A stretch of 63,504 nt of DNA, filler included, from Lenisia limosa (GCA_001655205.1; 10 parts of 10 records of this genome joined end to end with filler, not necessarily neighbours in it); one strand, 5' to 3'. Shown: positions 27,943-47,450, counted from the first letter of the whole stretch. Notes: a model not told the origin generated them from the sequence alone. A program made the numbers and translations.

Positions 27943-30900
27943 ATGACAGCTTCTGAGGACTGGATGTTGTCACATGACTCTTTTTCATCAATGACTGCAT
28001 TTTATGTAGGTTAAATGGATTTTGGTCATATTGTTTTAGGGTTCTAGGCCTGTTCATTTCCAGTCAAATCGTTCTCGTACATTTGTTCAGTTGGCCGGGA
28101 CTATGTCTCCAAAAGTCTTCCTGTAAATGTTATCAGGTCAACAGCGTTCAGCTTTGGGTAAGATTAATACAAAATGGAATGACTGTTGTTCGGTTGAACA
28201 TGAGCCATGGGGTGCCTGAAGAGCATATGATTCTAGTGAAAACTTTGCGTGATGCCGAAAAAAAAAGTGGAGTGCCGCTTAGCATAGTTATTGATTTGAA
28301 AGGGCCCGAAATCCGGACTGGAAGAGTCGTTGGAGAATGTGTTTGTTAAATTTTCTTTAAAAACATGATTTTTCCTCCTACAGGTTTCAATTGTCAAGGG
28401 AAGCATTGTTAACTTAACAGTTGATGAGAAATATGCTAAGGTTTGCTTGGCATTTCTAAAAATGGCTTCAACTGCAAAGAATATTTTTGTGGATTTACCT
28501 AGTTTTGCTCAAGCCGTTTCTATTGGACAGGTATCCTCTATTTTTTCACCAGCGTGTTTTTATTGATGATGGACTTCTTGAATTGGAGGTTATTTCAATA
28601 TCAAGGGAAAATGTCATTTGTACTGCTTGTAACTCTTGTGGGTTTTGATAGGGTAATTCATTTCTGTTTGTACCAAAGGAATGATACTGTAGGTGAAATT
28701 TCTTCATTGAAGGGGGTAAATTTGCCTTCCAAGGAGAGTGGAAATGAAAATAGTATTCCGACTTTATTCAAGCATGACGAAGTTGCTCTGCAGTTTGAAT
28801 GTGATTCTTGATTGTTCAGGTTTGGAATGGAAGCTGAAGTTGATCAAGTTTATGTGTCGTTTACACGGTCATCCCATGACATCAGGTTGAGGGGAAATCT
28901 CAGTTGAATCAAGTTTTTGCGTGCATGTGCTAACTGGCTAAACAACTATTTTAAACTAATACCTGATCGGGGGCTATATGGGGGTTATGTGGTGTGAATC
29001 ATCTGTATATGTTCTCTTCACGCTCTACAAAAAGAAGAATCAATGAGTTCAACAAAAAGATTAGACTTACAAAATTTTGGTGAAAAGGAAATTCCAATTT
29101 ACAGCGGAGGTATTTTCTTGTATTTGTATTATATCATCCTGTTTGAAATTTGACATTTTTTTAGAGCGGTGAAAGAGTATTTAAAGGGATCAGCAAACCC
29201 AATTCAAGTAATTGCTAAAATTGAAAACACTGAAGGTTCTTTTTTATGTTCTGATTGTGTAGGACTTACTAATCTTGATACAATTCTTGAAGAGTGTGAT
29301 GGTGTCTTGGTTGCAAGAGGTGATTTAGGTGTTGAAATAGGTTTTTATTTTATTTTCAATATGGTCTTGATAAAGTTATTGCTTTACAACAAATCATTGT
29401 TTCAAGAGCGACTCTTGCTGGAAAAGTGTGAACCCTTTTCTGTTTATGTTGAATTTAGCCTTCAATTGTTGCTACTCATATGCTTGATAGCATGATTAAC
29501 CAACCTCGTCCAACTCGTGCAGAAGTTTCTGATATTACACATACTGTTCTTGATGGCGCTGGAACTCTGCTGTTGACTGGAGAAATTGCCAAAGTAAGAG
29601 ATATTTTTTGAAATTATCTTAGATAGTTATATAATATACTATATCGTATGATTATAGTATATGATATGTATATTGTTTTTAATTGAAGTAAATTCTGAAG
29701 ATGATCCTCAAAAATGATATGAATTAACATTATATGATCAATACTGTAATTTTCAACTTATTCTATCAAGGACAATGTTCATTTTGGCTTGTTTTCACAG
29801 ATAGAGGAAAATTCACAGATATATGGACGCTGTGATATGTCATATGTAATAATACTATTATCATCATTGTTATTGGGCTTTCTTTGTCTTCTTATCTACC
29901 CCAAAAAGGGAAGAGGGGGGGGGATCCAGGATTATTCACCACTTTCGTTTTTCTTTTTATGATCAGAATATGCTCTGTTAATGAGGTAAAGTTATCAAAA
30001 AAAAAAGGAAAATTCAGCGACTCTTAAGAGAGATGTTTTTGGGGATAATTATGGTGAACTCACACTTTTTTTTCCTTATCAGGTAAAGAAAGAAGTATTA
30101 AATTTTTCCTACTCTGGACTCATAAGATTTTGTTGTCACCACTAGTGATATGATCGTTTGACCTACTTTCGAGTCGAAATGACGAATTATGGTACACGAG
30201 GATTAATCCGAGTTTATCAGAGTGTCATTGAGGCCGGTCAATTATCACACGAGTAGATGTGAGGTATCATATCAGTGTGGACAATGGACAATGTGAAAAT
30301 GATCCAAAAAAGTGATAATAGTGCTGATTAGTAGACTTAAATGCAGCTTAGAGAGCTTCTCAGCGGCTTGCGTGGAGAGGAGAGAGTTCATAGTTTCGGA
30401 AGATAGACAAACCCCTGAGGGCCTCATTTAAGTCAGCAGGTCACCAATTAGAGTCAAAAAGAACGCAGAAGAGCCAAAAACAAAAGGAGCAACACAATTG
30501 GATACAAAAAACCTCAAAAAAAAAACTGTGTTTCTGTGGAGCACTTGCTATTTAGAAAAGTTATGATCAAATACTACCAAATTATTGATGAGATATGCCT
30601 TTTATTTTTCAGAAGAACCATAAATAATGGCTCAGTGGTTCTACCCCAATGACCGCTCTGAATAAGACTCAGTTAATATCAGATTTGGCTTCTGACACAT
30701 AATGTCTTTTTTTCGATAATCAATCAATAATTTTTTTTTAAAAAAAAAAGCAATGATCTAATTTTAAACAGGGGAAATATCCACATGAATGTCTTAATAT
30801 ACTTCGTGGAACCGCTGTTGCAGCTGAAGGAATTCTCCCTAGTCACTGCTTTAGCCTGTTACAACAAGCTTCTTTACAATCAGTTTTTATTGTTATTCAA

Positions 30901-31223
30901 CCTAGGATAAACTTGCAACAGTGGTGTTATCTACGATGGATAATTACATTCCTTCTGCAATTGTCACTTTCGACTTAAATGTTGCCGCAACCCTTTCTTC
31001 CAAAGTTTGACAAACCTTTTAACCCTGTTTTTGCTTCCAATGCCAATTTTATTTCAAACCCAAACCCTCCATCAAGCTAGAGCAACCCGGTTGTTTAGAG
31101 GGGTTTTCCCGGTTTGCTGTTTTTATTAACCAGGTCAGTTCGTGCTCAACTGCTGGTGCTATAACTGAATTTAATGAAAAGTATAACTGCAAATTGGATC
31201 AAAATAAAGTCTTAAACATTTAA
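27943..31223 (+). CDS. PK: Pyruvate kinase (complete, about 14 introns, three GT-TG)
   Basis: ICSVG; RLNMSHG; [10 protein letters not shown]; VFIDDG; KGVNLP; AKIENTEG; ARGDLGVEI; [18 protein letters not shown]; [13 protein letters not shown]; RLFRGVFP; stop TAA at 31221-31223. Confidence 0.96.
28441..28464 (+). other. 24-nt GT-TG intron (PK)
   Basis: gtttgcttggcatttctaaaaatg. Removal gives DEKYAK|[11 protein letters not shown], colinear with yeast PK DDKYAKACDDKIMYVDY (recalled). It is in frame and stop-free, so retention cannot be excluded. Confidence 0.75.
29341..29363 (+). other. 23-nt GT-TG intron (PK)
   Basis: gtttttattttattttcaatatg. Removal restores the frame: [28 protein letters not shown]|[11 protein letters not shown], colinear with [39 protein letters not shown]. 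No AG within the segment. Confidence 0.9.
31005..31027 (+). other. 23-nt GT-TG intron (PK)
   Basis: gtttgacaaaccttttaaccctg contains an in-frame TGA. Removal gives SK|[25 protein letters not shown], colinear with [27 protein letters not shown]. The next two downstream AGs give the wrong frame. Confidence 0.9.
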
Positions 31224-32053
31224 GATACATTTACATTAAACACACTTATGTCCAAAGGATCGGGGTCAACATTGTGTTCTTTAAAGAAAGCAATAATTAC
31301 CATCACAACTGATCTTAAGTCAGGAACTTACATTAAACCTGTAAACGGGTGCAAAAATTTCCATCTGTTGGTAAACCTCAGTATCACTTCCCCCTAATTT
31401 CTTTAAAAAAGTCAAGATAAACAAAGAAAAGCAACTTCTTTGTAAGGTAACGTCATGAGGGCAGTTTTAAAGATACCTCTTGACATAAAACCATGATATT
31501 TGGCGAGTGTATCCTGATATGCAGCACTGTTGGTTAAACCATCACCAAACACAACATATTGAATTGGTTACAATACCTAATAATTTCATTGAGGGTGCCT
31601 TCATCCCTGGCCGCAAATCTTAACATAAATGCCAATTTAAACTGAAGAGCTCAAATTTAGAGAATACAGTTAAACCTGTTTAACCAAAGCAGTCCCTCAC
31701 TCCCTGAATTCTTTGTTGAGGACAACTTCTTACAACTTTTTTCTTTTAAAATCAGTCCTTGAAGTGAGAGAGAAGCGCCATTAGCTTGCCACGCATCTTT
31801 GATTTTCATGTAACATAAAATATTAAACCTTAATATTGCCAGCGATATCATTTTTCACAATACTCAAACCTCTTGCTCCAAAAATATCAGTATTACTGGT
31901 AAAAAAAAAACCAAAAATTTTATTCATTTCAGAGCAGGCATCCAGGAAAACAGTCACTTCAATATCTTGGGAGAGGCTGATTTTTTGAAATAAATCAGTA
32001 AGATGAGAGAGATACTCGAAATGCATTGTTAGAGAAATCAAAATTACCTCCAT
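31220..32053 (-). CDS. GLTP: Glycolipid transfer protein (GLTP family), 6-7 introns, four GT-TG
   Basis: Spliced product FLDACSEMNKIFDIFGARGLSIVKNDIAGNIKKIKDAW...EGLLWLNRALQF...NEIISAAYQDTLAKYHGFMSRGIFKTALMTLPYKETFFKEI. All GLTP signature motifs are present (DIxGNI, LWLxR, AY..TLxKYHG, PYK..F). Confidence 0.93.
31413..31435 (-). other. 23-nt GT-TG intron (GLTP)
   Basis: gttgcttttctttgtttatcttg. Removal gives PYKE|TFFKEI (human PYKSDFLKAL). Confidence 0.9.
31652..31675 (-). other. 24-nt GT-TG intron (GLTP)
   Basis: gtttaactgtattctctaaatttg contains an in-frame TAA. Removal gives LWLNR|ALQF (human MWLKRGLRF). The AG two nt further on would frameshift into a stop. Confidence 0.9.
31807..31828 (-). 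other. 22-nt GT-TG intron (GLTP)
   Basis: gtttaatattttatgttacatg. Required to join DIAGNIK to KIKDAW (human DISGNITKIKAVY). No AG inside. Confidence 0.92.
31888..31911 (-). other. 24-nt GT-TG intron (GLTP)
   Basis: gttttttttttaccagtaatactg. Removal gives FDIFGARGLSIVKNDIAGNI, the same length as human FDCLGSPVFTPIKADISGNI (recalled). Using the internal AG at nt 15-16 leads to a stop. Confidence 0.8.
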
Positions 32054-32499: not shown

Positions 32500-34080
32500 T
32501 CTTAGTTTCTGTGATGACAAATTCCAGAGTTTTGGGGAGTATATTACAGGACTGATGTCAAGTAAGCTTCTCATTTTAAATGGAGGGAATATCTACATTA
32601 CTTTGAAGGTGGGGAGCGGAGAGGATAAATGTACATAATTATCTTTTTTATATTGATGTTGCGCTTTTTATGTTATTGATACTCTTGTGATATACTCTTG
32701 TGCATTTCAGATAATCTTGCGCTTATTCTTGCGCACAATTCAGTACCAAACATTCCTTTTAAGGTTTGCTGGTACTAAGGATTATTGTTATGCTTTTATT
32801 TTGATTTATTCAATAGTTTGCGGACTTTCGTTCTTTGTTTATTACACTGTACTTAACCCATTAGGATGGGTTCTTTGCTGACGAAACTGCCTTCAGTCCC
32901 GCCTACTTTAAAAGTAAAGGTTTGAATGAATTGTAATTATTACAACCTGTATTTTTTTTTACAAGAGAATTCCTTACAATTCTCTAGGTTTTGGAAGTCG
33001 GCGCCATTATTGAAGGAGTCCCTCAAATTGCTGTCGTCCCTTTGTCTCCCGGAGAGCAAATTGTGTCAATTGAGGAAGAACAGGTAATTACCAAATTAGA
33101 AAACCTCAAGGAAGACAAAATTCGAAACCAAAGATTCTCAACCAAATTTGGTGGAATTGTCGGTCCGAAAGTATGTTAAAAATAGACTTTGCTTTATGAC
33201 CATTTACTCTTTCAGATTTTTTATGGCAAATAAACCAGATGCCAGCTGAATGGTCATTGAGACCAACAGCAATGCAACCTCCTTTGGCGAAAAACGTTTC
33301 AAACCGATCACAGTTCTCAGACAGAGATTGAGGTAGACGTGCCAAATAAAGAAATACTACAACTTTCTTAGCCCAGCAAAGAGAGGCACAAAATACTTCA
33401 TTGCAATTTGAAATACGGCATTATCTCTAGATCGAATTGCGTAGTACACCTCGCTTAAAACAATTAAGCTCAAGGAGGCGCCAAGTCCTTGAACCGCGTT
33501 CCAGCTGTCTGTGGGAGGTAAAGAGACATTTGGTGAACGATATCACTGGGTGGGCTGCTTTGTACTTCGAGTAAACTGTGATTAAAAACAGAAGCATACA
33601 GAAAGAGGTGAGAGACTGGTGACCAATGAAAACAAGAAAGATGGCGTCATTATATTCGAACAGGTTCTTGTTCTTGAAGTTGAACCTTGTTTTCGTAAAC
33701 AAGCAGATTTTTTGAAATAAACCTAAATCAACAAATAAAAACATAACCTTTATTCAAGAAGACGGCTGAGAGTATATGCCAGAGAAAAGGAAAAAGGCCA
33801 GGGACTTGCTAATTGATGAATACAGAAATAGCATAATTATACACAATGACAATATAATATCATACAACTATTTAAAAATTTATGATTCTGATTTTGAGCA
33901 ATTTCAAAAAAAGAAATCCACCATTATACACGGGTGCGAGTTTGAGAGACATTAACCCCGAAGACATTTTGGGCTCCGATCTCAACCTTCAGCGAGCCCG
34001 CATCGCCGACACGGATTGCGAATGCCATGAGGCCAGGCAACTTACTGTACAGGGTGCCAATGACCTGGTTGATACGTTGT
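32500..34080 (+). CDS. Hypothetical spliced gene(s)
   Basis: Exon-like blocks with GT-AG ends (LEVGAIIEGVPQIAVVPLSPGEQIVSIEEEQ; QMPAEWSLRPTAMQPPLAKTFQ; NPPLYTGASLRDINPEDILGSDLNLQRARIAD). No family recognised; boundaries uncertain. Confidence 0.4.
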
Positions 34081-37448: not shown

Positions 37449-38769
37449 TTTAAGAATGTATTTTCTTTTTGCTTCCGGGTAATTCTGGAGTGAAAATTAG
37501 CACTAATTTTTTTGGAGTGGATTTGGTCTCGCCTACTTGAAAGCCTGAGTAAATTTAGTTATTTTTTGTTTATTTATGCTTAAAAATTATATTCTCAACG
37601 TCTTTAAAAACCTATTAAGCAGCTTGTGGATGCAACCCAATATACTTCACTCTATTTGGAATCTGATTTTTTTAATTTGGTCGACCCGCCGGATCCTATA
37701 CTACCCAAACCCTATTATAATACTTAAAATAGGGAGTTGATGCTGCTAATAAGGATATTAAGGCAACCATGGAGGCAAAATATATACTTCGTATGCGGGC
37801 CTGACTATTCCTGCACCGCCTCCCAATCCAACGAAACAAAGGAAATTCCTTCAATAACAAAGGCGCACTTAAAAAATAGTACATACAACAAGAGATTTTG
37901 CTTGTACGGTTTAGTTTTGAACGATTTCACATTCGGAAGTGGCGCAACTTGAGCCGATCTTGTAAAAAATTTTGCTCAGGAAAAACCACCCACATATTCC
38001 TAGAACGGTGATTAGATTGGGCCTTACAAGAGAAGTGATCTACTGATCCAGCCGTTATTCCTGTCGCGCTGCCTAATATTTAAATTTATTTTGCTTGCTA
38101 CTAATAATTAAATAAAACACTCTGATACACTTGGAATGAACCTTCGTGTTATCTCCGTTATCATTTCGAACCGTAAGTCGGTCAAATGATTATTTCACAA
38201 GTGGATATGGGTCAATTTTTATAAGAAATATCATATGTTCTCTTAATCAGCGAAATTATTTGAACAACCCAATGAATAATTGGTTGAAAATTGTAGTGAA
38301 ACGTAGAATTAAAAGGCTCAACCCATTTGCTCCAAAGAGTAGTTCATCATGGGTTTACCTTTCGATTCCATGTTCTGGAGCATTTCATCTTCCTCTACAA
38401 GAAGAGATACAACCTTCTTTGTAGCCTGGGATACAAGCACTAAAATGGTTTACATCAGCTGTAAAAAGTGAAAAAACGCATAGCAATGTAGACAAGAAAA
38501 AATGATGAAATTATGTTTGGGGACATTAAATCCAACCTACTTTATTGAGACAATGTCCCCAGCCTTGATGATGGCCCCCAATGGGAGGTTGAGTTGAGAA
38601 ACAGAACGAGGGGGGAAGAAAGTTGCTTCTTATAGGCGAGTAAGGTAAGAAGTAGCCAGCCACCATCCAGGAGGTATGTTGAGTGGTGAGCAAACCACCA
38701 CATAAAAACAAACAACTTCTCTTGATTGTTCATCTCTTCCCCTTTTCAGGATATCAAGATCCGGCTCAC

Positions 38770-38880
38770 GTCACCTCTAGTCTTGGCGACCCGAACCGAA
38801 CCGACCCATTTATTCTGTACACCGATGCCTCATCTTTCGTTATTGGTGGTGTTCTCTACAAGTCCAAGAGGAAGGTCCCC
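38770..38880 (+). mobile_element. Ty3/Gypsy-type RNase H-like fragment (degenerate)
   Basis: DPNRTDPFILYTDASSFVIGGVLYKS resembles the LTR-retrotransposon RNase H motif (P D ... PF.L.TDAS...IG.VL). Confidence 0.6.
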
Positions 38881-39020
38881 GCACCGTCCGCTACATGTCA
38901 TCTCTACTCAAGCCTGCTGAGAAAAATTACACTGCATGTTCGCCTTTTCATACTGTGGAGCTTTCAAGATTGCTAGTGACCTTTGTCTTTTGTTTTCAGC
39001 ATTTCAAGCAACCGGACTCA

Positions 39021-39378
39021 TTATGGCTATCACCATTTCCCCATGGCAAGTTGTAAAGCACCTCACCGACCCTGACATCAACTTCACCATCCCCGTCCAA
39101 TACCCTCCCCGCACCACCCTCTACTCAGCCCTCACCACTGACGAAGCCATTGCAGGATACGCCGCTGCCAAGCCCATCGACAACACTGAAGCTGACTGGT
39201 CCGTCATCAAGAAGTATATCGAGAAGATTGACAATGCCAAGCGTGAGGTATTCGTTACCAACTTCAGCAACAACACTCTTCCCTGGTCAACCCGTGTCAT
39301 TGTTGAGCCCCGACCACAAGAATTGACCCCTGAAGAGAATGTCCCGCTGATCTGCCAACGTCTTCAGGCCGCCAACAT
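39021..39378 (+). CDS. Intronless hypothetical ORF (truncated by N gap)
   Basis: MAITISPWQVVKHLTDPDINFTIPVQYPPRTTLYSALTTDEAIAGY... At least 119 uninterrupted codons with strongly C-ending codon usage. Confidence 0.6.
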
Positions 39379-40705
39379 NNNNNNNNNNNNNNNNNNNNNN
39401 NNNNNNNNNNNNNNNNNNNNNNNNNNNNNNNNNNNNNNNNNNNNNNNNNNNNNNNNNNNNNNNNNNNNNNNNNNNNNNNNNTCTCAAAAATCGGTTACTA
39501 ATCCCCATTGATTCACAAGGTTCAAAAAGAAGGCCCTAATCCCACCAAGCAGCCAACTAAGGTATGCTTATTTAAACTGGAAATGTTACTGCCCGACTTT
39601 TTTTTACAGCTAATATAAACATTTTAGGCTCAACCCAAGGCTCGCAAAAAAGGACACTGTTAAAAAGCCAAAAACGGTGTACATTGATGACATTTTTTGA
39701 AAACTATTTTGTTTTGTTATCAAATTTGACTGGCTTAGACTCAACGTGCAAAAAGCGCCTGTTCGGCAAAAAGCCCGCATTGAAACCCGGGCGACAAAGC
39801 GTTGATGGTTATTGTATTATGTTGATTGTTTTCCAGGTATCTATGAAAAAGTATGAGATTTCTGAACAAATATTGAATAAATGGGGGTTTCAATCCAATA
39901 AATGAATTTTCAATACACTGAAGAGATGTGTGAACTGTTAAAAACAATTCCTAAAAAAAGTGATCCGCATTTTGTCCAGTAATCCGCATTTTGACAATAT
40001 GCTCCCGCACATAAAGTGTTACGGTTATGAAAGAGGCCTGTTTTCGTGGTTAATGCGCCATAACTTGGCTTAATATGTATGAATTTCATCCTAATAAACA
40101 GCAAATTACATACTGAAGTCATTTTCAAATGTTTTTTTGAAAAAACCCCGAGCAAATCATCCCCTGCAGTAAAAACCCTCTAGGTTATTAATCTGATTAT
40201 CTATACAATTGAAGAGAAAACAATCAGAGAGGATGAGAAGAGGAGAGCAGTGAAATATGATAGATCACAAAAGCTGCCTTTAAATATTGTCATAGCATTC
40301 ATAATCCATGCAAACTGGGTAGATAACCGGGCACAACGTCCTCTCTAAGATCTAAAGATTTGAGCACAGCTCCAAAATATAGAAATAAATAAGATATCAA
40401 GGTATGGTTCAGAGAAAGTTTTAAAAGGTCTCAGAATTATCGAGATCATATTGAATTGCGAGATAAGGGCAGTCGGAAAAGGAGCCAACGACACAGGGAA
40501 GGCCTAAACACCACACTTCCGATTGCTTATTTCAAGAAAGTGGCTAATAATTCCAATTACACGAGGAGAAGTGGGAAAGAGCAGCCTAGGTACTTCGAAC
40601 TCGCTTCAAACATTTTACATCCAAGCATACCTTCTAAAACTATAACTGTAATACCATTAAGATGTAAAGGCGCCTGCAAAGCGAACAACAAGTTAATAAA
40701 GTAAT

Positions 40706-41919: not shown

Positions 41920-42819
41920 CTACACTTTCAAAAAGACATTATTGTTTGAAGAAAGGTACGTTGTTTTGCCACTTTGAGATAATGATTTTGCGATAAATTT
42001 TGCTGCTTCAATACGCCTCAGTAACAACAGAGTACTACCAAATTGAAGAGCATTATTAATAAGTTTAGCTGCACAGGCTTCTCCTAATAAATCAAACAAA
42101 GAATGAACCTTCTGATCTGATCACAATTGCTTCAGTTTCACGTTTATCTTTTTCAACAATGAATTTAGCCCTTTCCGCTTCCTGTTCAGCAACCTGCTTT
42201 GATTCAATTGCATTTGTAAACTCTGCACCAAAAGTCAGATGTGTCTTAAAATAAGGAAATAAAAAAAAACAATAGATACATCATCAACCACAATATGAAA
42301 CTGCCTCAGTCGTTCAACAAGGGTTGAATTAATAGATTCAGAAACCTCTTCACGCTTAGTAATCAATTCAGCAGCCTCATATTGCGCAACTACTTGTTTC
42401 AGTACTTCATTTCCAACTGAAGGCAAAACTCTGTCTTCAAAATCTAAACCATACACCGAGAACAAATCAGACAAAAAGTGAATATCAGGTTTATACAAAA
42501 TCCTTAGTGTCAAATTAACGTTCTGTAAATCTTTTGTCCCAGTTGACGTAGGAAGATTTCTAGGTCTTGTTTTTATATCAATGACAATTGGCTTCTGCAA
42601 CCAAGGCAAAAAAAAATGTGTTCCTTCAGCAAAATTATTAAAAAGAGCAACATATAGCAATTTTGTTTAATCCAGTTGTTCGATTAAACATAATGCACCT
42701 TTCACCAGGGTTTACAAAAATAATATTTTACAATAAAAACCTGTGAAAAAGGAAGAGTGCACAATCGAAGCAGAAAGTCCTGAAAAAAGGGCCAATTTGC
42801 CCAAAAACTGAAGAGACAT
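41920..42819 (-). CDS. PHB1: Prohibitin 1 (4 introns, two GT-TG)
   Basis: [49 protein letters not shown]...[15 protein letters not shown]...[25 protein letters not shown]...DDVSI|[32 protein letters not shown]. Confidence 0.97.
42630..42651 (-). other. 22-nt GT-TG intron (PHB1)
   Basis: gttgctctttttaataattttg contains an in-frame TAA. Removal gives [15 protein letters not shown], the same length as human RFRGVQDIVVGEGTH. Confidence 0.9.
42715..42740 (-). other. 26-nt GT-TG intron (PHB1)
   Basis: gtttttattgtaaaatattatttttg. Removal gives SFFT|[12 protein letters not shown] (human LYNVDAGHRAVIFDR, recalled). The next AG gives a stop-containing frame. Confidence 0.9.
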
Positions 42820-43429: not shown

Positions 43430-44716
43430 GCCTAATTGAACATGAAACCGAGGGAGGGGGTGTAAAGAAGAGAGAAACATTGAAGCGAAGGCAAAAAAAC
43501 AATGAACAGCCATTTGTGACTTGAGTGCATGAGTCTGGGCGTGAAAAACTTCGTTGAAACTTGGTTTTTTGCCCTCTTCTTTTTGGCTTGAGGGGTAGAT
43601 GCCAGTGGGATGTGGTGGTAAATCTTACGGAGGGATGTCACGAAATGCCAGTCAAGGTTGGGGTTCACTCGAAAATAGTATATCCGTAAAAAAGTGTGAA
43701 TGTTTGCAAGGAAAACTCGCTTGGTACAAGAACCACATTTCGAATGCACTAGTGAGTACAGGTTTTCACACTTGTCAGTGGTATGAGCTCGTGGCTCGTG
43801 TGGTTGTCCCTTTGGGTTAAGCCCCTTTCTTGAACTATTAATCAGTTTTGGGATGACTGACAATGACCGTGCGGCGGCAATTAGGTCGAAGGACAGATTT
43901 CGAATCGAATAGTCATTATTCTAAAAAAACGTTAGATTTTAAATGAGAAAGTTTGTATAAGAAAAGACAGCAGCAGGTTACAGTCAGGTAACCTGCAAAC
44001 ACAGGGATTGTGGCCTCGGATCCCTCTAAACGCTGGCCGTGGGACAGGCCGCGCTTGTCGTGGCATCTTAAAAGGTCACTTACAGATTGGGCCCACTGCC
44101 CCTCTCTGTTGTGGCCAAGGGAAAAATTTGGCAATCAAAACACCACTGAAGAATTCTTCTGCCTTTGGTACAGACTGGCGGTCACTACTCCAGTTGTTGG
44201 GTGTCAGTGAAGTTTTACGAGTCGTGGCTACTTCAAAGAATGCCTTGTAGAAGGGTCCATCTTCCTTCATAACTGCAAAACGACACCGCTTAAAAACATG
44301 CATTATATATTGTGTGTTCAAATATATTACCCTGACTCCACAAGAAAGGGTGTTGGAATATGGGGCAACAGGAATAAGCTGGACTGCTCCCCAACTGTCA
44401 ATCAGAGGACGCCCCCGTCATGCAGGCGGATATGAGAGGCATGACAAACTCCTCCAATCCTCTCCACTCCTGGCCAAAAGAAGATAATGAAATCTTAAAA
44501 AAGTAAAAAAATAAAGAGGTTTACAGAAAGAATTGCTTGTTATAAAAAAAAAACCAAAAAGAGCAGAACCCACGCCCACTGAGCAGCCAGTTTCCTTCCA
44601 TTCTGCATAAAGGACACATTTCACAGTAAAACCGCCCAGAATCTTCCTGAGTTCTAAAATAGATAAAACAACTGAAAATAACAAAAAGGGTGACTGAAGG
44701 GGCTGCGGTAGACATC
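43430..44716 (-). CDS. Hypothetical spliced gene
   Basis: Joinable exons WGAVQLIPVAPYSNTLSCGVR|RCRFAVMKEDGPFYKAFFEVATTRK...EEFFS|...EGQWAQSVSDLLRCHDKRG. No family recognised. Confidence 0.5.
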
Positions 44717-45729
44717 GTCTTCCTCAGTGATCAGGAGTTTGTTTTGTTTTGTCATTTTATTCACATCTAGATACCAAGACTATCATTATCGCCACATCGA
44801 GATGCTTCGAGACGATCTGCTTAAACTGGAAGGCTTTGGGGCGTATGCTCGTTCGCGTTGTTTGTGGGTAGACTTTGTTACCAATCAGACATTTTATTGT
44901 TATACTCTTATCGGATTCCAAAGAATAATTGTTCAGCTCACTACTTCAACACCCAAAGCTCAAAACAAACCCTCATTCGCAACCAAGCTCTCATTCATGA
45001 GAATGAAGGGACAATTAACGGTATGCTGTTTCATTCTTTGGATATAACCACATCTTTCCCAGGCTCAATCAAGCTCAACCAGCTGATCAAATCCCTTGCG
45101 GAATCGATATCCGCCCTTGGGTCACTTCCCATCCGGTTGGGGGGTAGGTATTCATATTACATTGGGGGCGGTGTCTAATAGAGTAGAATTGGTGATGTGG
45201 GCTCCATGTTAACTGAGAAGTCCTGCCACAGAAGGCACAGTCGCAGCGTCTACAGCCAATGCCAACAGTGCGGTGACGTATGCTGTCGGGTACATCCGTT
45301 CCCTCTTGGCTGGTAGCGTTCCTCCGCTTGACGATCCGAGCTTCGATGCTGACGCGGATGGAGTTTGCATGGGAATAATCTTCTCTTTTGCGTTTGCTGT
45401 AGCAAATGATACTTCTGCTAGTAATGTTAATGTTTGTGTTCTTCCATTTCAAGAAGCATTGTGTAGAGTTCAATTCCATGTTTAATGCCACAAAAGGTCT
45501 GGCGGGGGTGGAGTAACATTTGAAGAAACGAAAGAATAACATTTGAGTCGATGGGGAAGAGGGTGAGTAGCGGATGTTCTTTATTATTTTTTTTTATCAT
45601 GTTTTTTTTTTGTTATGAATATCACCCCCATCCCAAGATATGCTGCTTGTGGATTCGTTGCAAGAAGTCATTACGAGTAAACAATACAAGTACAGATACG
45701 TAACTAAAATACAATTACTCCTCGGTTTT

Positions 45730-47450
45730 TGGAAACAACCGCTTTCCCTCAAAAATTGGAATTCACTTCCTTATTAGTGAGCGTTCCGAGGAATTGCGTG
45801 GCGTAACACCCTTCCACTCTTTTTCACCAGACTCATTGATCACTAGTCGGTGATTTCCGTTGGGCTTGGTTGGGGTTAGTGTGTAGTCTACAATGGGGGC
45901 ATTCAGGAGCTTGCGGAATGATTGCCGGAGTGATGGCTTCCGCTGAAATGTTAACAATTAACCATCAATATTCACTACAACACGATAGTGTATACCTTAA
46001 CTTGTTGCTATTCTTGAAAAGGACCCACAACTTTTCTAAATGTTTCCACAAGAAGAGGTTCAGTTGCCGAATGGCTTGAGCCCGATACCGGATTTGTTGC
46101 CAAAACATAACCTATTATCATGATATTGTGGAACGTGTAGCTCAAACCACGATCGGAAGTAACCGTTTGGAGTACCGCCTTCAATGAGACTATCACCATT
46201 ATCGTCCAGAGCTGTTAGTGGTGATACCTAGAAAAATAATGAGTAAATAACAACATACACACGAGCCTACCACATCGAATGTCAAGTCGTGACTTGCCCC
46301 TTTCAATGGTTCAGATTCAACAAGCTTCTCAATTGCTTGAAAAGGAATAACCTTCATAGATTCTTCAAACACCACTAACAAATGATAAGGTAAAAACAGC
46401 CAACCATTCACCAAATCTTCTGTAATAAGACTATCAGTGTCAAACAAAATCTCCTTCTGGAAAACAAAGGACTCCACTGCGACATTGGGGACAATTTCGT
46501 CAACCTACAAGTTTAACCAGATTATATCCCAGGAATTTACCTCACAAGTAAGGTTAAAAAATGCCTCAAGAATACATTATAGAATATCATATCATATGTA
46601 TTATAGTTTATAAGTATGACATATGATACATTTTCAAGAACTTAGATAGAAGTTGGATATTTCGACCTCTTCGACATAAATAAAATGAAATTTCTTTCTT
46701 CAAAAGCGTCAAAAAGCAAAACAAACCAGAGCGTGAAAATAATACCTTGAAGATTCAGCAAGTCTTCGTAGCACTGGACTTGGTAAAGGNNNNNNNNNNN
46801 NNNNNNNNNNNNNNNNNNNNNNNNNNNNNNNNNNNNNNNNNNNNNNNNNNNNNNNNNNNNNNNNNNNNNNNNNNNNNNNNNNNNNNNNNNNNNNNNNNNN
46901 NNNNNNNNNNACCTACAGAAATTCCGACAATAGTTGAATGGTTGCGGCATCTGTACGATGGAAGTCGGACAACGAGAGGTCCATGTGCTGAATACACCAG
47001 ATACTCCGTGTACTTGTGTGGAGAAGGAACAATGTCGAAACAGTGGCCACCACCACAGGTAACAGGCACCATAGTTTCTAACGCATAATTGCAGTAGTAG
47101 CTGCGAAGAACCTTTAATGAGCCGCAGGTTGACTTAACAACCGAATGTGGCGTGTCAGATATGGAAAGGGCAAGGTTCTAAGCACAATCAATATTTAAAA
47201 GCAAGAATAAGCGAAGCAAATGAAACATACAGGAACGGGCAAGGGGATGTCAACATGAACCGGATCATTGTTGGTGTCTTCAGCTTCAACACAATCTGCA
47301 ACAATTTCTTCGTCCTGGTGGTGAGAAAGAAAGGAAACCATACTGAACAATCACGCTGTCTCTTTGCGGTTAACTCTCGTTCTATTCCACGCGATTTGCG
47401 TTTATCATCATGAGATCGGGTTGTGTACGGATTTTGCGTATGCACTTCAC
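45730..47450 (-). CDS. Hypothetical spliced gene(s)
   Basis: Exon-like blocks with short GT-AG introns (DEEIVADCVEAEDTNNDPVHVDIPLPVP; MESFVFQKEILFDTDSLITEDLVN; VSPLTALDDNGDSLIEGG). Function unknown. Confidence 0.4.

What the first reader, a model, noticed from the sequence alone, without database searches (positions are those of the whole stretch)
31220..32053. GLTP: four of six introns in an 830-bp gene end in TG, and nearby AGs are bypassed
At 31888-31911 an AG at intron nt 15-16 is passed over for the TG at nt 23-24. At 31652-31675 the TG at nt 23-24 is used although an AG follows two nt later (…tttg|ag). Both AG choices lead to stops. Inference: the acceptor is set by a ruler of about 22-26 nt from the donor or branch point, with any suitable G accepted, rather than by scanning to the first AG.
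Basis: partly seen in the sequence, partly recalled or inferred. Interest (0 to 1): 0.9.

Follow-up and report, generated by a model that had tools for sequence, protein, structure and literature searches.

The report
Tiny introns ending in TG
In the breviate protist Lenisia limosa, about a third of the introns on this stretch are only 21-26 bases long and end in TG instead of the near-universal AG; assembled transcripts confirm this, and it has apparently not been described as a common intron class.

Summary
Confirmed and extended. The organism is Lenisia limosa (Breviatea). This comes from the EukProt accessions of transcript-derived proteins that match the window exactly.

The GLTP gene (minus strand, 32053-31220) has seven introns, not six. 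Five are GT..TG (24, 24, 22, 24 and 23 nt) and two are GT..AG (50 and 25 nt). A translation of this seven-intron model is identical to a 213-aa Trinity protein. A 634-nt ENA transcript contig matches the spliced model apart from three extra T in T-runs.

The AG at intron nt 15-16 (31911-31888) is skipped, and the TG at 31675-31652 is used although an AG lies 2 nt further on. Either AG choice would truncate the protein.

The phenomenon is not confined to GLTP. Pyruvate kinase has 3 TG introns of 15 (transcript-verified). A neighbouring gene has one (RNA contig). Prohibitin has 2 of 4 (homology only). In all, 11 of 31 introns are TG-type. All 11 are 21-26 nt long, and all 12 introns longer than 26 nt end in AG (Fisher p=0.0014).

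The ruler idea is only partly right. Longer introns skip TTG/ATG at the same distances from the donor. A placement a few bases after a branch-like A fits better, but this is unproven.

The parts
31220..32053 (-). GLTP gene CDS (213 aa after splicing), seven introns
   Evidence: The model translation is identical to P0243. P0243 scores Pfam GLTP PF08718 at 135 bits, E=3e-39, covering profile positions 1-146 of 147.
32024..32047 (-). GLTP intron 1, 24 nt, GT..TG, directly after codon 2
   Evidence: The junction ATGGAG|CATTTC is present in transcript contig L001. P0242 and P0243 both start ME|HFEY.
31888..31911 (-). GLTP intron 2, 24 nt, GT..TG; the AG at nt 15-16 is not used
   Evidence: P0242 and P0243 read KIF-D-IFGARG. 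L001 is spliced here but has 2 extra T in the adjoining T-run. Using the AG leaves a 49-aa ORF.
31807..31828 (-). GLTP intron 3, 22 nt, GT..TG; one isoform removes 25 nt instead
   Evidence: The exact junction is in L001. P0243 reads NIKKIKD, whereas P0242 reads NIKIKD. Pfam profile positions 36|37 meet at this junction.
31652..31675 (-). GLTP intron 4, 24 nt, GT..TG; an AG lies 2 nt downstream in the exon
   Evidence: The exact junction is in L001. P0242, P0243 and P0244 all read WLNR|ALQF. Using the AG leaves a 106-aa ORF.
31527..31576 (-). GLTP intron 5, 50 nt, GT..AG; retained in isoform P0242; skips ATG at nt 22 and TTG at nt 25
   Evidence: L001 and P0243. P0242 reads through into the intron. 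Internal G positions are listed.
31413..31435 (-). GLTP intron 6, 23 nt, GT..TG; the boundaries allow no alternative placement
   Evidence: P0243 reads YKE|TFLKKL. L001 is spliced here, with 1 extra T in the T-run 3 nt downstream.
31314..31338 (-). GLTP intron 7, 25 nt, GT..AG
   Evidence: The exact junction is in L001, and P0243 agrees.
27943..31223 (+). Pyruvate kinase gene, 15 introns (22-1178 nt); its stop codon overlaps the GLTP stop codon by 2 nt
   Evidence: P0245 (EukProt, Lenisia, Trinity i2, 481 aa) maps exactly to the window. Every junction has one GT-start solution ending in AG or TG; one also allows a shifted GT..TT. Pfam PK scores 336 bits.
28441..28464 (+). PK intron 4, 24 nt, GT..TG (in frame and stop-free, yet spliced)
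   Evidence: Exact mapping of P0245.
29341..29363 (+). PK intron 10, 23 nt, GT..TG
   Evidence: Exact mapping of P0245.
31005..31027 (+). PK intron 14, 23 nt, GT..TG
   Evidence: Exact mapping of P0245.
28793..28819 (+). PK intron 7, 27 nt, GT..AG; skips a TTG at nt 22 (counter-example to a donor ruler)
29236..29262 (+). PK intron 9, 27 nt, GT..AG; skips TTG at nt 22 and GTG at nt 24
29426..29458 (+). PK intron 11, 33 nt, GT..AG; skips ATG at nt 23 and TTG at nt 26
33343..33363 (-). 21-nt GT..TG intron in an unnamed minus-strand gene
   Evidence: An RNA contig of run X1 lacks these 21 nt, while the presumed DNA run X2 has them. Removal takes out an in-frame TAG and extends the ORF.
42715..42740 (-). 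Prohibitin intron 1, 26 nt, GT..TG (homology only)
   Evidence: It is required to keep the reading frame. The spliced model aligns without gaps to 14 homologues at this junction.
42630..42651 (-). Prohibitin intron 2, 22 nt, GT..TG (homology only)
   Evidence: It is required to keep the reading frame, and the alignment is gap-free at the junction.

Best explanation
Shown:
- These are real introns of Lenisia limosa, removed from RNA and not from DNA.
- All start with GT, most with GTT.
- In the ultrashort class (21-26 nt) the last two bases can be TG as well as AG. Longer introns on this stretch always end in AG.

Inferred:
- They are cut by the ordinary (U2-type) spliceosome, with relaxed recognition of the base before the final G: A or U is accepted, and the G is kept.
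- The acceptor is placed by position. It is the first A/U-G a few bases downstream of a branch-like A that sits about 17-19 nt from the donor. UG is tolerated only at a very short branch-to-acceptor spacing of about 4-5 nt.
- On this reading the AG at nt 15-16 of 31911-31888 is upstream of the branch site and is never a candidate. The AG 2 nt beyond 31652 is simply not reached.
- From established structural work, recalled and not tested here: the final G pairs with the first G of the intron, and the base before it contacts the branch adenosine. That would explain why the G is kept while A can become U.
For: - GLTP: the seven-intron model equals P0243 exactly, and it matches L001 at nucleotide level.
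- PK: 15 introns from exact mapping of P0245.
- Neighbouring gene: a 21-nt GT..TG gap in an RNA contig that is absent from the presumed DNA contigs.
- DNA holds all the GLTP introns.
- Counts: 31 introns, all GT at the 5' end. 11 TG introns are all 21-26 nt, and 12 of 12 introns over 26 nt end in AG, p=0.0014.
- The base before the final G is never C or G, in 31 of 31 introns.
- TG-type introns have T at -8 in 10/11, A at -6 in 8/11 (p=5e-4) and A at +18 in 8/11.
- The best TACTAAC-like branch A lies at nt 17-19, 4-5 nt before the 3' G, in 9 of 11 TG introns. The same spacing is 4-11 nt for most AG introns.
- TG and AG introns share the same GTT-rich 5' end.
Against: - No branch point has been mapped. 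The branch assignments come from a crude motif score.
- A branch-anchored predictor gets 18/23 short introns right, no better than the donor rule at 19/23.
- GLTP intron 5 contains TTCAATATG at nt 14-22, the same ending as PK intron 10, yet the observed transcripts use the AG at nt 50.
- Isoform P0242 removes 25 nt at intron 3. With a GT start that implies an AA end.
- Only assembled transcripts were available, not read counts, so minor use of the neighbouring AGs cannot be excluded.
- The prohibitin and P1 introns rest on homology only.
Confidence: 0.6

Rival explanations
1. Donor-anchored ruler: the acceptor is whatever suitable G lies about 21-26 nt from the donor.
For: The rule 'first G at 19-21 nt or more from the donor' predicts 19 of 19 introns of 26 nt or less. 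No G used is closer than nt 21, and no skipped G in the verified short introns lies beyond nt 18.
Against: All 12 longer introns skip a G in that range, 8 of them a TTG or ATG at nt 21-26, and use a later AG. The acceptor base at -2 is restricted to A or T.
Confidence: 0.2
2. Sloppy acceptor choice plus quality control. The spliceosome uses several nearby G or AG sites. Out-of-frame products are degraded, so only productive junctions appear in assembled transcripts and ORF sets.
For: The Trinity gene has at least five isoforms. P0242 carries an alternative 25-nt removal and a retained intron. Most skipped TG sites in longer introns would shift the reading frame.
Against: Three assemblies agree on the same junctions. 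TG introns show positional base preferences that pure noise would not give.
Confidence: 0.15
3. A separate splicing machinery (minor-spliceosome-like or novel) removes the TG class.
For: U12-type introns are known to tolerate varied 3' ends chosen by distance from the branch site (my own knowledge; GT-TG is listed among rare U12-type ends in PMC1557818).
Against: TG introns have no U12-type donor (RTATCCTT) or branch motif. Their 5' ends match those of the AG introns. An Rfam scan of the piece found no snRNA, which is uninformative.
Confidence: 0.03
4. Artefact: strain indels, misassembly, or removal at the DNA level.
For: L001 differs from the genome in two T-runs next to TG junctions.
Against: Nine sites in three genes all start with GT and are removed precisely, restoring conserved proteins. 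The presumed DNA run holds them at even depth with no joined form. They have no TA-bounded ends of the kind seen in eliminated DNA elements.
Confidence: 0.02

Closest known systems
Ordinary U2-type GT-AG spliceosomal introns
   Same: GT at the 5' end in 31 of 31 introns. There is an A-containing branch-like motif near the 3' end and a final G. They are removed from RNA, and they sit in the same genes beside normal GT-AG introns of 27-1178 nt.
   Different: The 3' dinucleotide is TG in 11 of 31 introns, and in 11 of 19 of those of 26 nt or less. There is no room for a polypyrimidine tract.
Ultrashort-intron lineages: Paramecium, Stentor, the chlorarachniophyte nucleomorph, mikrocytids (16-17 nt, PMC10245619), and myxobolid myxozoans and Dicyema (22-27 nt, PMC13644364)
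   Same: A narrow length peak under 30 nt, reduced splice-site motifs, and a likely branch A a few bases from the 3' end.
   Different: Those papers describe AG acceptors, and a GTa donor in myxozoans and Dicyema. Lenisia has mostly GTT donors and frequent TG acceptors. It also keeps long introns in the same genes.
Rare GT-TG introns of human and mouse (GNAS, TSPYL2, ARS2; PMC4176328, PMC1557818)
   Same: The same terminal dinucleotides, and they are U2-like.
   Different: There are only a handful per genome, in long introns and often as alternative sites. Here they are about a third of the introns sampled and are constitutive in conserved genes.
U12-type introns with variable 3' ends placed by distance from the branch site (my own knowledge; table in PMC1557818)
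   Same: The acceptor appears to be defined by position, with a tolerant terminal dinucleotide.
   Different: There is no U12 donor or branch consensus. Only one intron (28531-28552) happens to begin with GTATCCT.
Lineages with abundant non-canonical introns: Amoebophrya (PMC7789003), Euglena nonconventional introns (PMC11170887), Fritillaria (my own knowledge)
   Same: A large-scale departure from the GT-AG rule.
   Different: Those lineages vary at both ends or lack consensus borders. Here the donor GT and the final G are fixed and only position -2 varies.

Membership tests
U2-type spliceosomal introns | GT (GU) at the 5' end | tested here: met
   31 of 31 introns. Every junction has one GT-start placement ending in AG or TG; PK intron 3 also allows a shifted GT..TT.
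U2-type spliceosomal introns | AG at the 3' end | tested here: not met
   11 of 31 introns end in TG. For these, no alternative boundary placement gives AG.
U2-type spliceosomal introns | Branch-point A upstream of the acceptor | tested here: inconclusive
   A motif score places an A 4-5 nt before the 3' G in 9 of 11 TG introns, and A is enriched at -6 (p=5e-4). No lariat data are available.
U2-type spliceosomal introns | Removed from RNA while present in DNA | tested here: met
   The contig of the presumed DNA run X2 is collinear across GLTP. Transcript contig L001 and the Trinity proteins lack the introns.
U12-type (minor) introns | Donor RTATCCTT and branch TCCTTAAC | tested here: not met
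   The donors are mostly GTTT, GTTG or GTTC. One AG intron begins GTATCCT, apparently by chance.
Ultrashort-intron systems | Narrow length peak under 30 nt | tested here: met
   19 of 31 introns are 21-26 nt and two more are 27 nt.
DNA-eliminated sequences (ciliate-type) | Absent from somatic DNA; TA-bounded | tested here: not met
   They are present in the presumed DNA run at even depth, and their boundaries are GT..TG.
Euglenid nonconventional introns | No conserved borders; the ends pair with each other | tested here: not met
   GT and the final G are invariant. The ends (GTT... and ...TTG) are not complementary when read directly.
GLTP protein family (PF08718) | Full-length match above Pfam's cut-off | tested here: met
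   P0243 scores 135 bits against a cut-off of 25.6, covering profile positions 1-146 of 147.

The most novel reading that the evidence does not exclude
Lenisia limosa, and perhaps all Breviatea, uses UG as a major, constitutive 3' splice site genome-wide in its ultrashort introns. It would be the first lineage in which the AG rule is relaxed for roughly a third of introns while the donor GU and the final G stay fixed. This implies a change in how the second catalytic step, or an AG-reading factor, checks position -2.
Probability: 0.6. Interest if true: 0.85.

Novelty: new variant of a known kind. Interest (0 to 1): 0.8.

Why it matters
The AG at the end of introns is one of the most constant signals in eukaryotic gene expression. 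A free-living protist close to the animal-fungal lineage spliced many introns at UG. That gives a natural experiment on what the spliceosome really needs at the acceptor, and on how position can replace sequence when introns shrink to about 22 nt.

There is also a practical consequence. Gene finders that allow only GT-AG or GC-AG introns will mis-predict a large share of Lenisia genes. Five of the seven GLTP introns would be missed, and three of those five break the reading frame. Published gene sets and presence/absence calls for breviates may therefore be affected.

Tried and rejected
**RNA read laying**
- Laying RNA run X1 on GLTP and on prohibitin gave zero depth. The run index nevertheless says X1 holds 0.38 and 0.59 of the sampled words.
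- The tool silently drops contigs that resemble human genes. I therefore treated the zero depth as a hole, not as absence.

**Guesses at the organism, all dropped once EukProt accessions named Lenisia limosa**
- Myxozoa or Dicyema (PMC13644364; their donors are GTa).
- Mikrocytids (16-17 nt introns, PMC10245619).
- Other Ascetosporea (PMC11069148).
- Foraminifera (PMC6783311, PMC3079666).

**Searches that did not help identify the organism**
- Ribosomal protein P1 search.
- Prohibitin search.
- Protein Atlas.
- Rfam found nothing on the piece.
- A PDB search with a single exon was too weak.

**My own model errors, corrected by the transcripts**
- For GLTP intron 5 I first considered 26-nt GT..TG and 32-nt GT..GG versions. 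It is a 50-nt GT..AG intron.
- I first modelled PK intron 2 as 32 nt. It is 22 nt.

**Other**
- A branch-anchored prediction rule did not beat the donor rule (18/23 versus 19/23).
- The original Lenisia paper (Hamann et al. 2016) is not held in the library. I could not check whether its supplement mentions these introns.
- None of the ten full-text searches, including the GT-TG, GU-UG and Lenisia/breviate ones, found a paper describing them.

Full report
**What is there**

The finding lies in a GLTP-family gene on the minus strand. Its ATG is at 32053 and its stop codon at 31222-31220. I first modelled the gene by frame reasoning and Pfam profile coordinates. Exon pieces matched PF08718, with profile positions 36|37 meeting exactly at the 22-nt segment 31828-31807.

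A protein search with the first open frame then returned a 140-aa Trinity protein identical to the exons. Its cluster held two more members:
- a 213-aa isoform, P0243;
- a 118-aa ENA protein, P0244.

The EukProt accessions name the organism as Lenisia limosa (Breviatea). The eLife paper PMC5953543 notes that ample genomic and transcriptomic data exist for this species, from Hamann et al. 2016.

**Check of the observation**

Translating the window with seven introns removed gives a protein identical to P0243.

| Intron | Coordinates (minus strand) | Length | Ends |
|---|---|---|---|
| 1 | 32047-32024 | 24 | GT..TG |
| 2 | 31911-31888 | 24 | GT..TG |
| 3 | 31828-31807 | 22 | GT..TG |
| 4 | 31675-31652 | 24 | GT..TG |
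| 5 | 31576-31527 | 50 | GT..AG |
| 6 | 31435-31413 | 23 | GT..TG |
| 7 | 31338-31314 | 25 | GT..AG |

The ENA transcript contig that encodes P0244 (L001, 634 nt) aligns to this spliced model over 631 nt. It differs only by three inserted T, all in T-runs. Five of the seven 24-nt junction strings are present verbatim.

P0243 scores 135 bits on Pfam GLTP over the whole profile. The gene is therefore intact and expressed, not a pseudogene.

Run X2 carries the locus collinear, without gaps and at even depth. Its type is not on record, but it holds introns and intergenic DNA, so I take it to be DNA. Nothing suggests removal at the DNA level.

Using the AG at nt 15-16 of intron 2 leaves an ORF of 49 aa. 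Using the AG just past intron 4 leaves 106 aa. The count is five of seven, not four of six.

**Is it confined to GLTP?**

No.

- **Pyruvate kinase.** An exhaustive search with a PK exon returned P0245, a 481-aa Lenisia Trinity protein with 100% identity. It maps exactly onto the window from 27943 to 31223 with 15 introns. At every junction one GT-start placement ends in AG or TG; intron 3 also allows a shifted GT..TT placement. Three are GT..TG: 28441-28464, 29341-29363 and 31005-31027.
- **A neighbouring gene.** An RNA contig of run X1 shows three ordinary GT..AG introns (101, 68 and 45 nt) in a small plus-strand gene. It also has a 21-nt gap at 33343-33363. On the minus strand this reads GT..TG and removes an in-frame TAG from an ORF. 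The presumed DNA run has no such gap.
- **Prohibitin (42819-41920, minus strand).** It needs two GT..TG introns (26 and 22 nt) and two GT..AG introns (26 and 25 nt) to stay in frame. The spliced model aligns without gaps to 14 homologues at both TG junctions. This rests on homology only.
- **Ribosomal protein P1.** It has one 25-nt GT..AG intron, also by homology only.

**Pattern over 31 introns (26 transcript-verified)**

- All 31 begin with GT. 11 end in TG and 20 in AG. None ends in CG or GG.
- TG introns are 21-26 nt long.
- At 26 nt or less the split is 11 TG to 8 AG. Above 26 nt it is 0 to 12 (Fisher p=0.0014).
- TG and AG introns share GTT-rich donors.
- Aligned at the 3' end, TG introns have T at -8 in 10/11 and A at -6 in 8/11. 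The background A frequency is 0.22, giving p=5e-4. They have no G between -7 and -2.
- A simple score for a TACTAAC-like branch site puts the branch A at nt 17-19, 4-5 nt before the final G, in 9 of 11 TG introns. For most AG introns of 34 nt or less the spacing ranges from 4 to 11 nt.

**How it most likely works**

Shown:
- The introns are removed at the RNA level.
- The donor GT and the final G are fixed.
- Position -2 is A or U.
- TG is restricted to the shortest introns.

Inferred:
- One spliceosome handles both classes.
- The acceptor is placed by position close to the branch site.
- UG is accepted only at the tightest spacing.

On this reading, the AG at nt 15-16 of intron 2 lies upstream of the branch-like A at nt 19. 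It would make a 16-nt intron, below the smallest seen here (21 nt), so it is never a candidate. In intron 4 the TG comes first and the AG 2 nt later is not reached.

From established structures of the post-catalytic spliceosome (recalled, not tested here), the final G pairs with the first G of the intron and the base before it touches the branch adenosine. That fits a fixed G with a variable -2 base.

**Limits of the ruler idea**

'First G at 19-21 nt or more from the donor' predicts 19 of 19 short introns but none of the 12 longer ones. All 12 skip a G in that range, and 8 of them skip a TTG or ATG at nt 21-26. Examples:
- PK 28793-28819 skips a TTG at nt 22.
- PK 29426-29458 skips an ATG at nt 23 and a TTG at nt 26.
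- GLTP intron 5 skips an ATG at nt 22 that sits in the same TTCAATATG context that ends PK intron 10.

My branch-anchored rule gets 18 of 23 right, no better than the donor rule's 19 of 23. The anchor is therefore not settled.

A further possibility is that acceptor choice is partly sloppy and only productive products survive. Isoform P0242 removes 25 nt at intron 3 and retains intron 5.

**Comparison with what is known**

- Ultrashort introns are known in ciliates, nucleomorphs, mikrocytids (PMC10245619), and myxobolids and Dicyema (PMC13644364). All are described with AG acceptors.
- GT-TG introns are known only as rare individual cases in mammals (PMC4176328, PMC1557818).
- No full-text search (GT-TG, GU-UG, and Lenisia or breviates with introns or splicing) found a description of this feature.
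- The original Lenisia paper could not be read.

I rate this a new variant of a known kind of system.

**Caveats**

- The evidence comes from assembled transcripts, not read counts, so the share of alternative acceptor use is unknown.
- The three transcript sources may derive from the same RNA sample.
- No branch points are mapped.
- The sample is one 20-kb stretch.
- The zero RNA depth conflicts with the index shares.

Noticed in passing
window 31220-31223: The stop codons of the convergent pyruvate kinase gene (+, 31221-31223) and GLTP gene (-, 31222-31220) overlap by 2 nt within TTAA. Each 3' UTR must therefore run antisense through the other gene's coding exons. Trinity merged both genes into one 'gene' (DN83_c0_g2).
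   Followed up: partly
window 33204-33342: The last coding exon of a small plus-strand gene (33216-33233) lies inside the last coding exon of a minus-strand gene. The minus gene's stop codon (33206-33204) falls within the plus gene's 45-nt intron. One RNA contig runs across both genes.
   Followed up: partly
L001 positions about 131-132 and 497; window near 31912 and 31409: The ENA transcript contig has 2 extra T and 1 extra T in T-runs, at or 3 nt after two TG junctions. Both shift the reading frame. This may be homopolymer sequencing error or real slippage; I could not decide.
   Followed up: partly
window 31804-31828 (-): Trinity isoform P0242 lacks one lysine at GLTP intron 3, so 25 nt are removed instead of 22. 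With a GT start this intron would end in AA; the other possible placements have non-GT starts. The same isoform retains intron 5.
   Followed up: partly
window 29594-30771 (+): The pyruvate kinase gene holds one 1178-nt intron among introns of 22-55 nt (and one of 279 nt). I did not examine its content.
   Followed up: no
window 27943-31223 (+), P0245 residues about 362-481: The pyruvate kinase protein matches the Pfam barrel domain (336 bits), but no C-terminal PK domain is reported. At 481 aa the protein is somewhat short.
   Followed up: no
window 38683-39053 (+), up to about 41400: A frameshifted remnant of a retrotransposon, with weak RT RNase H-like Pfam hits split over two frames, lies next to an assembly gap (N run at 39379-39481).
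   Followed up: partly
window 44650-46500: The presumed DNA run shows 5-8 times higher depth here, with many variant contigs. RNA contigs match with mismatches and odd joints. This is probably a multicopy expressed repeat.
   Followed up: no
window 32024-32047, 31888-31911, 28441-28464, 29236-29262: Four introns whose length is a multiple of three contain no in-frame stop codon. Retaining any of them would add 8-9 residues silently rather than trigger quality control.
   Followed up: partly
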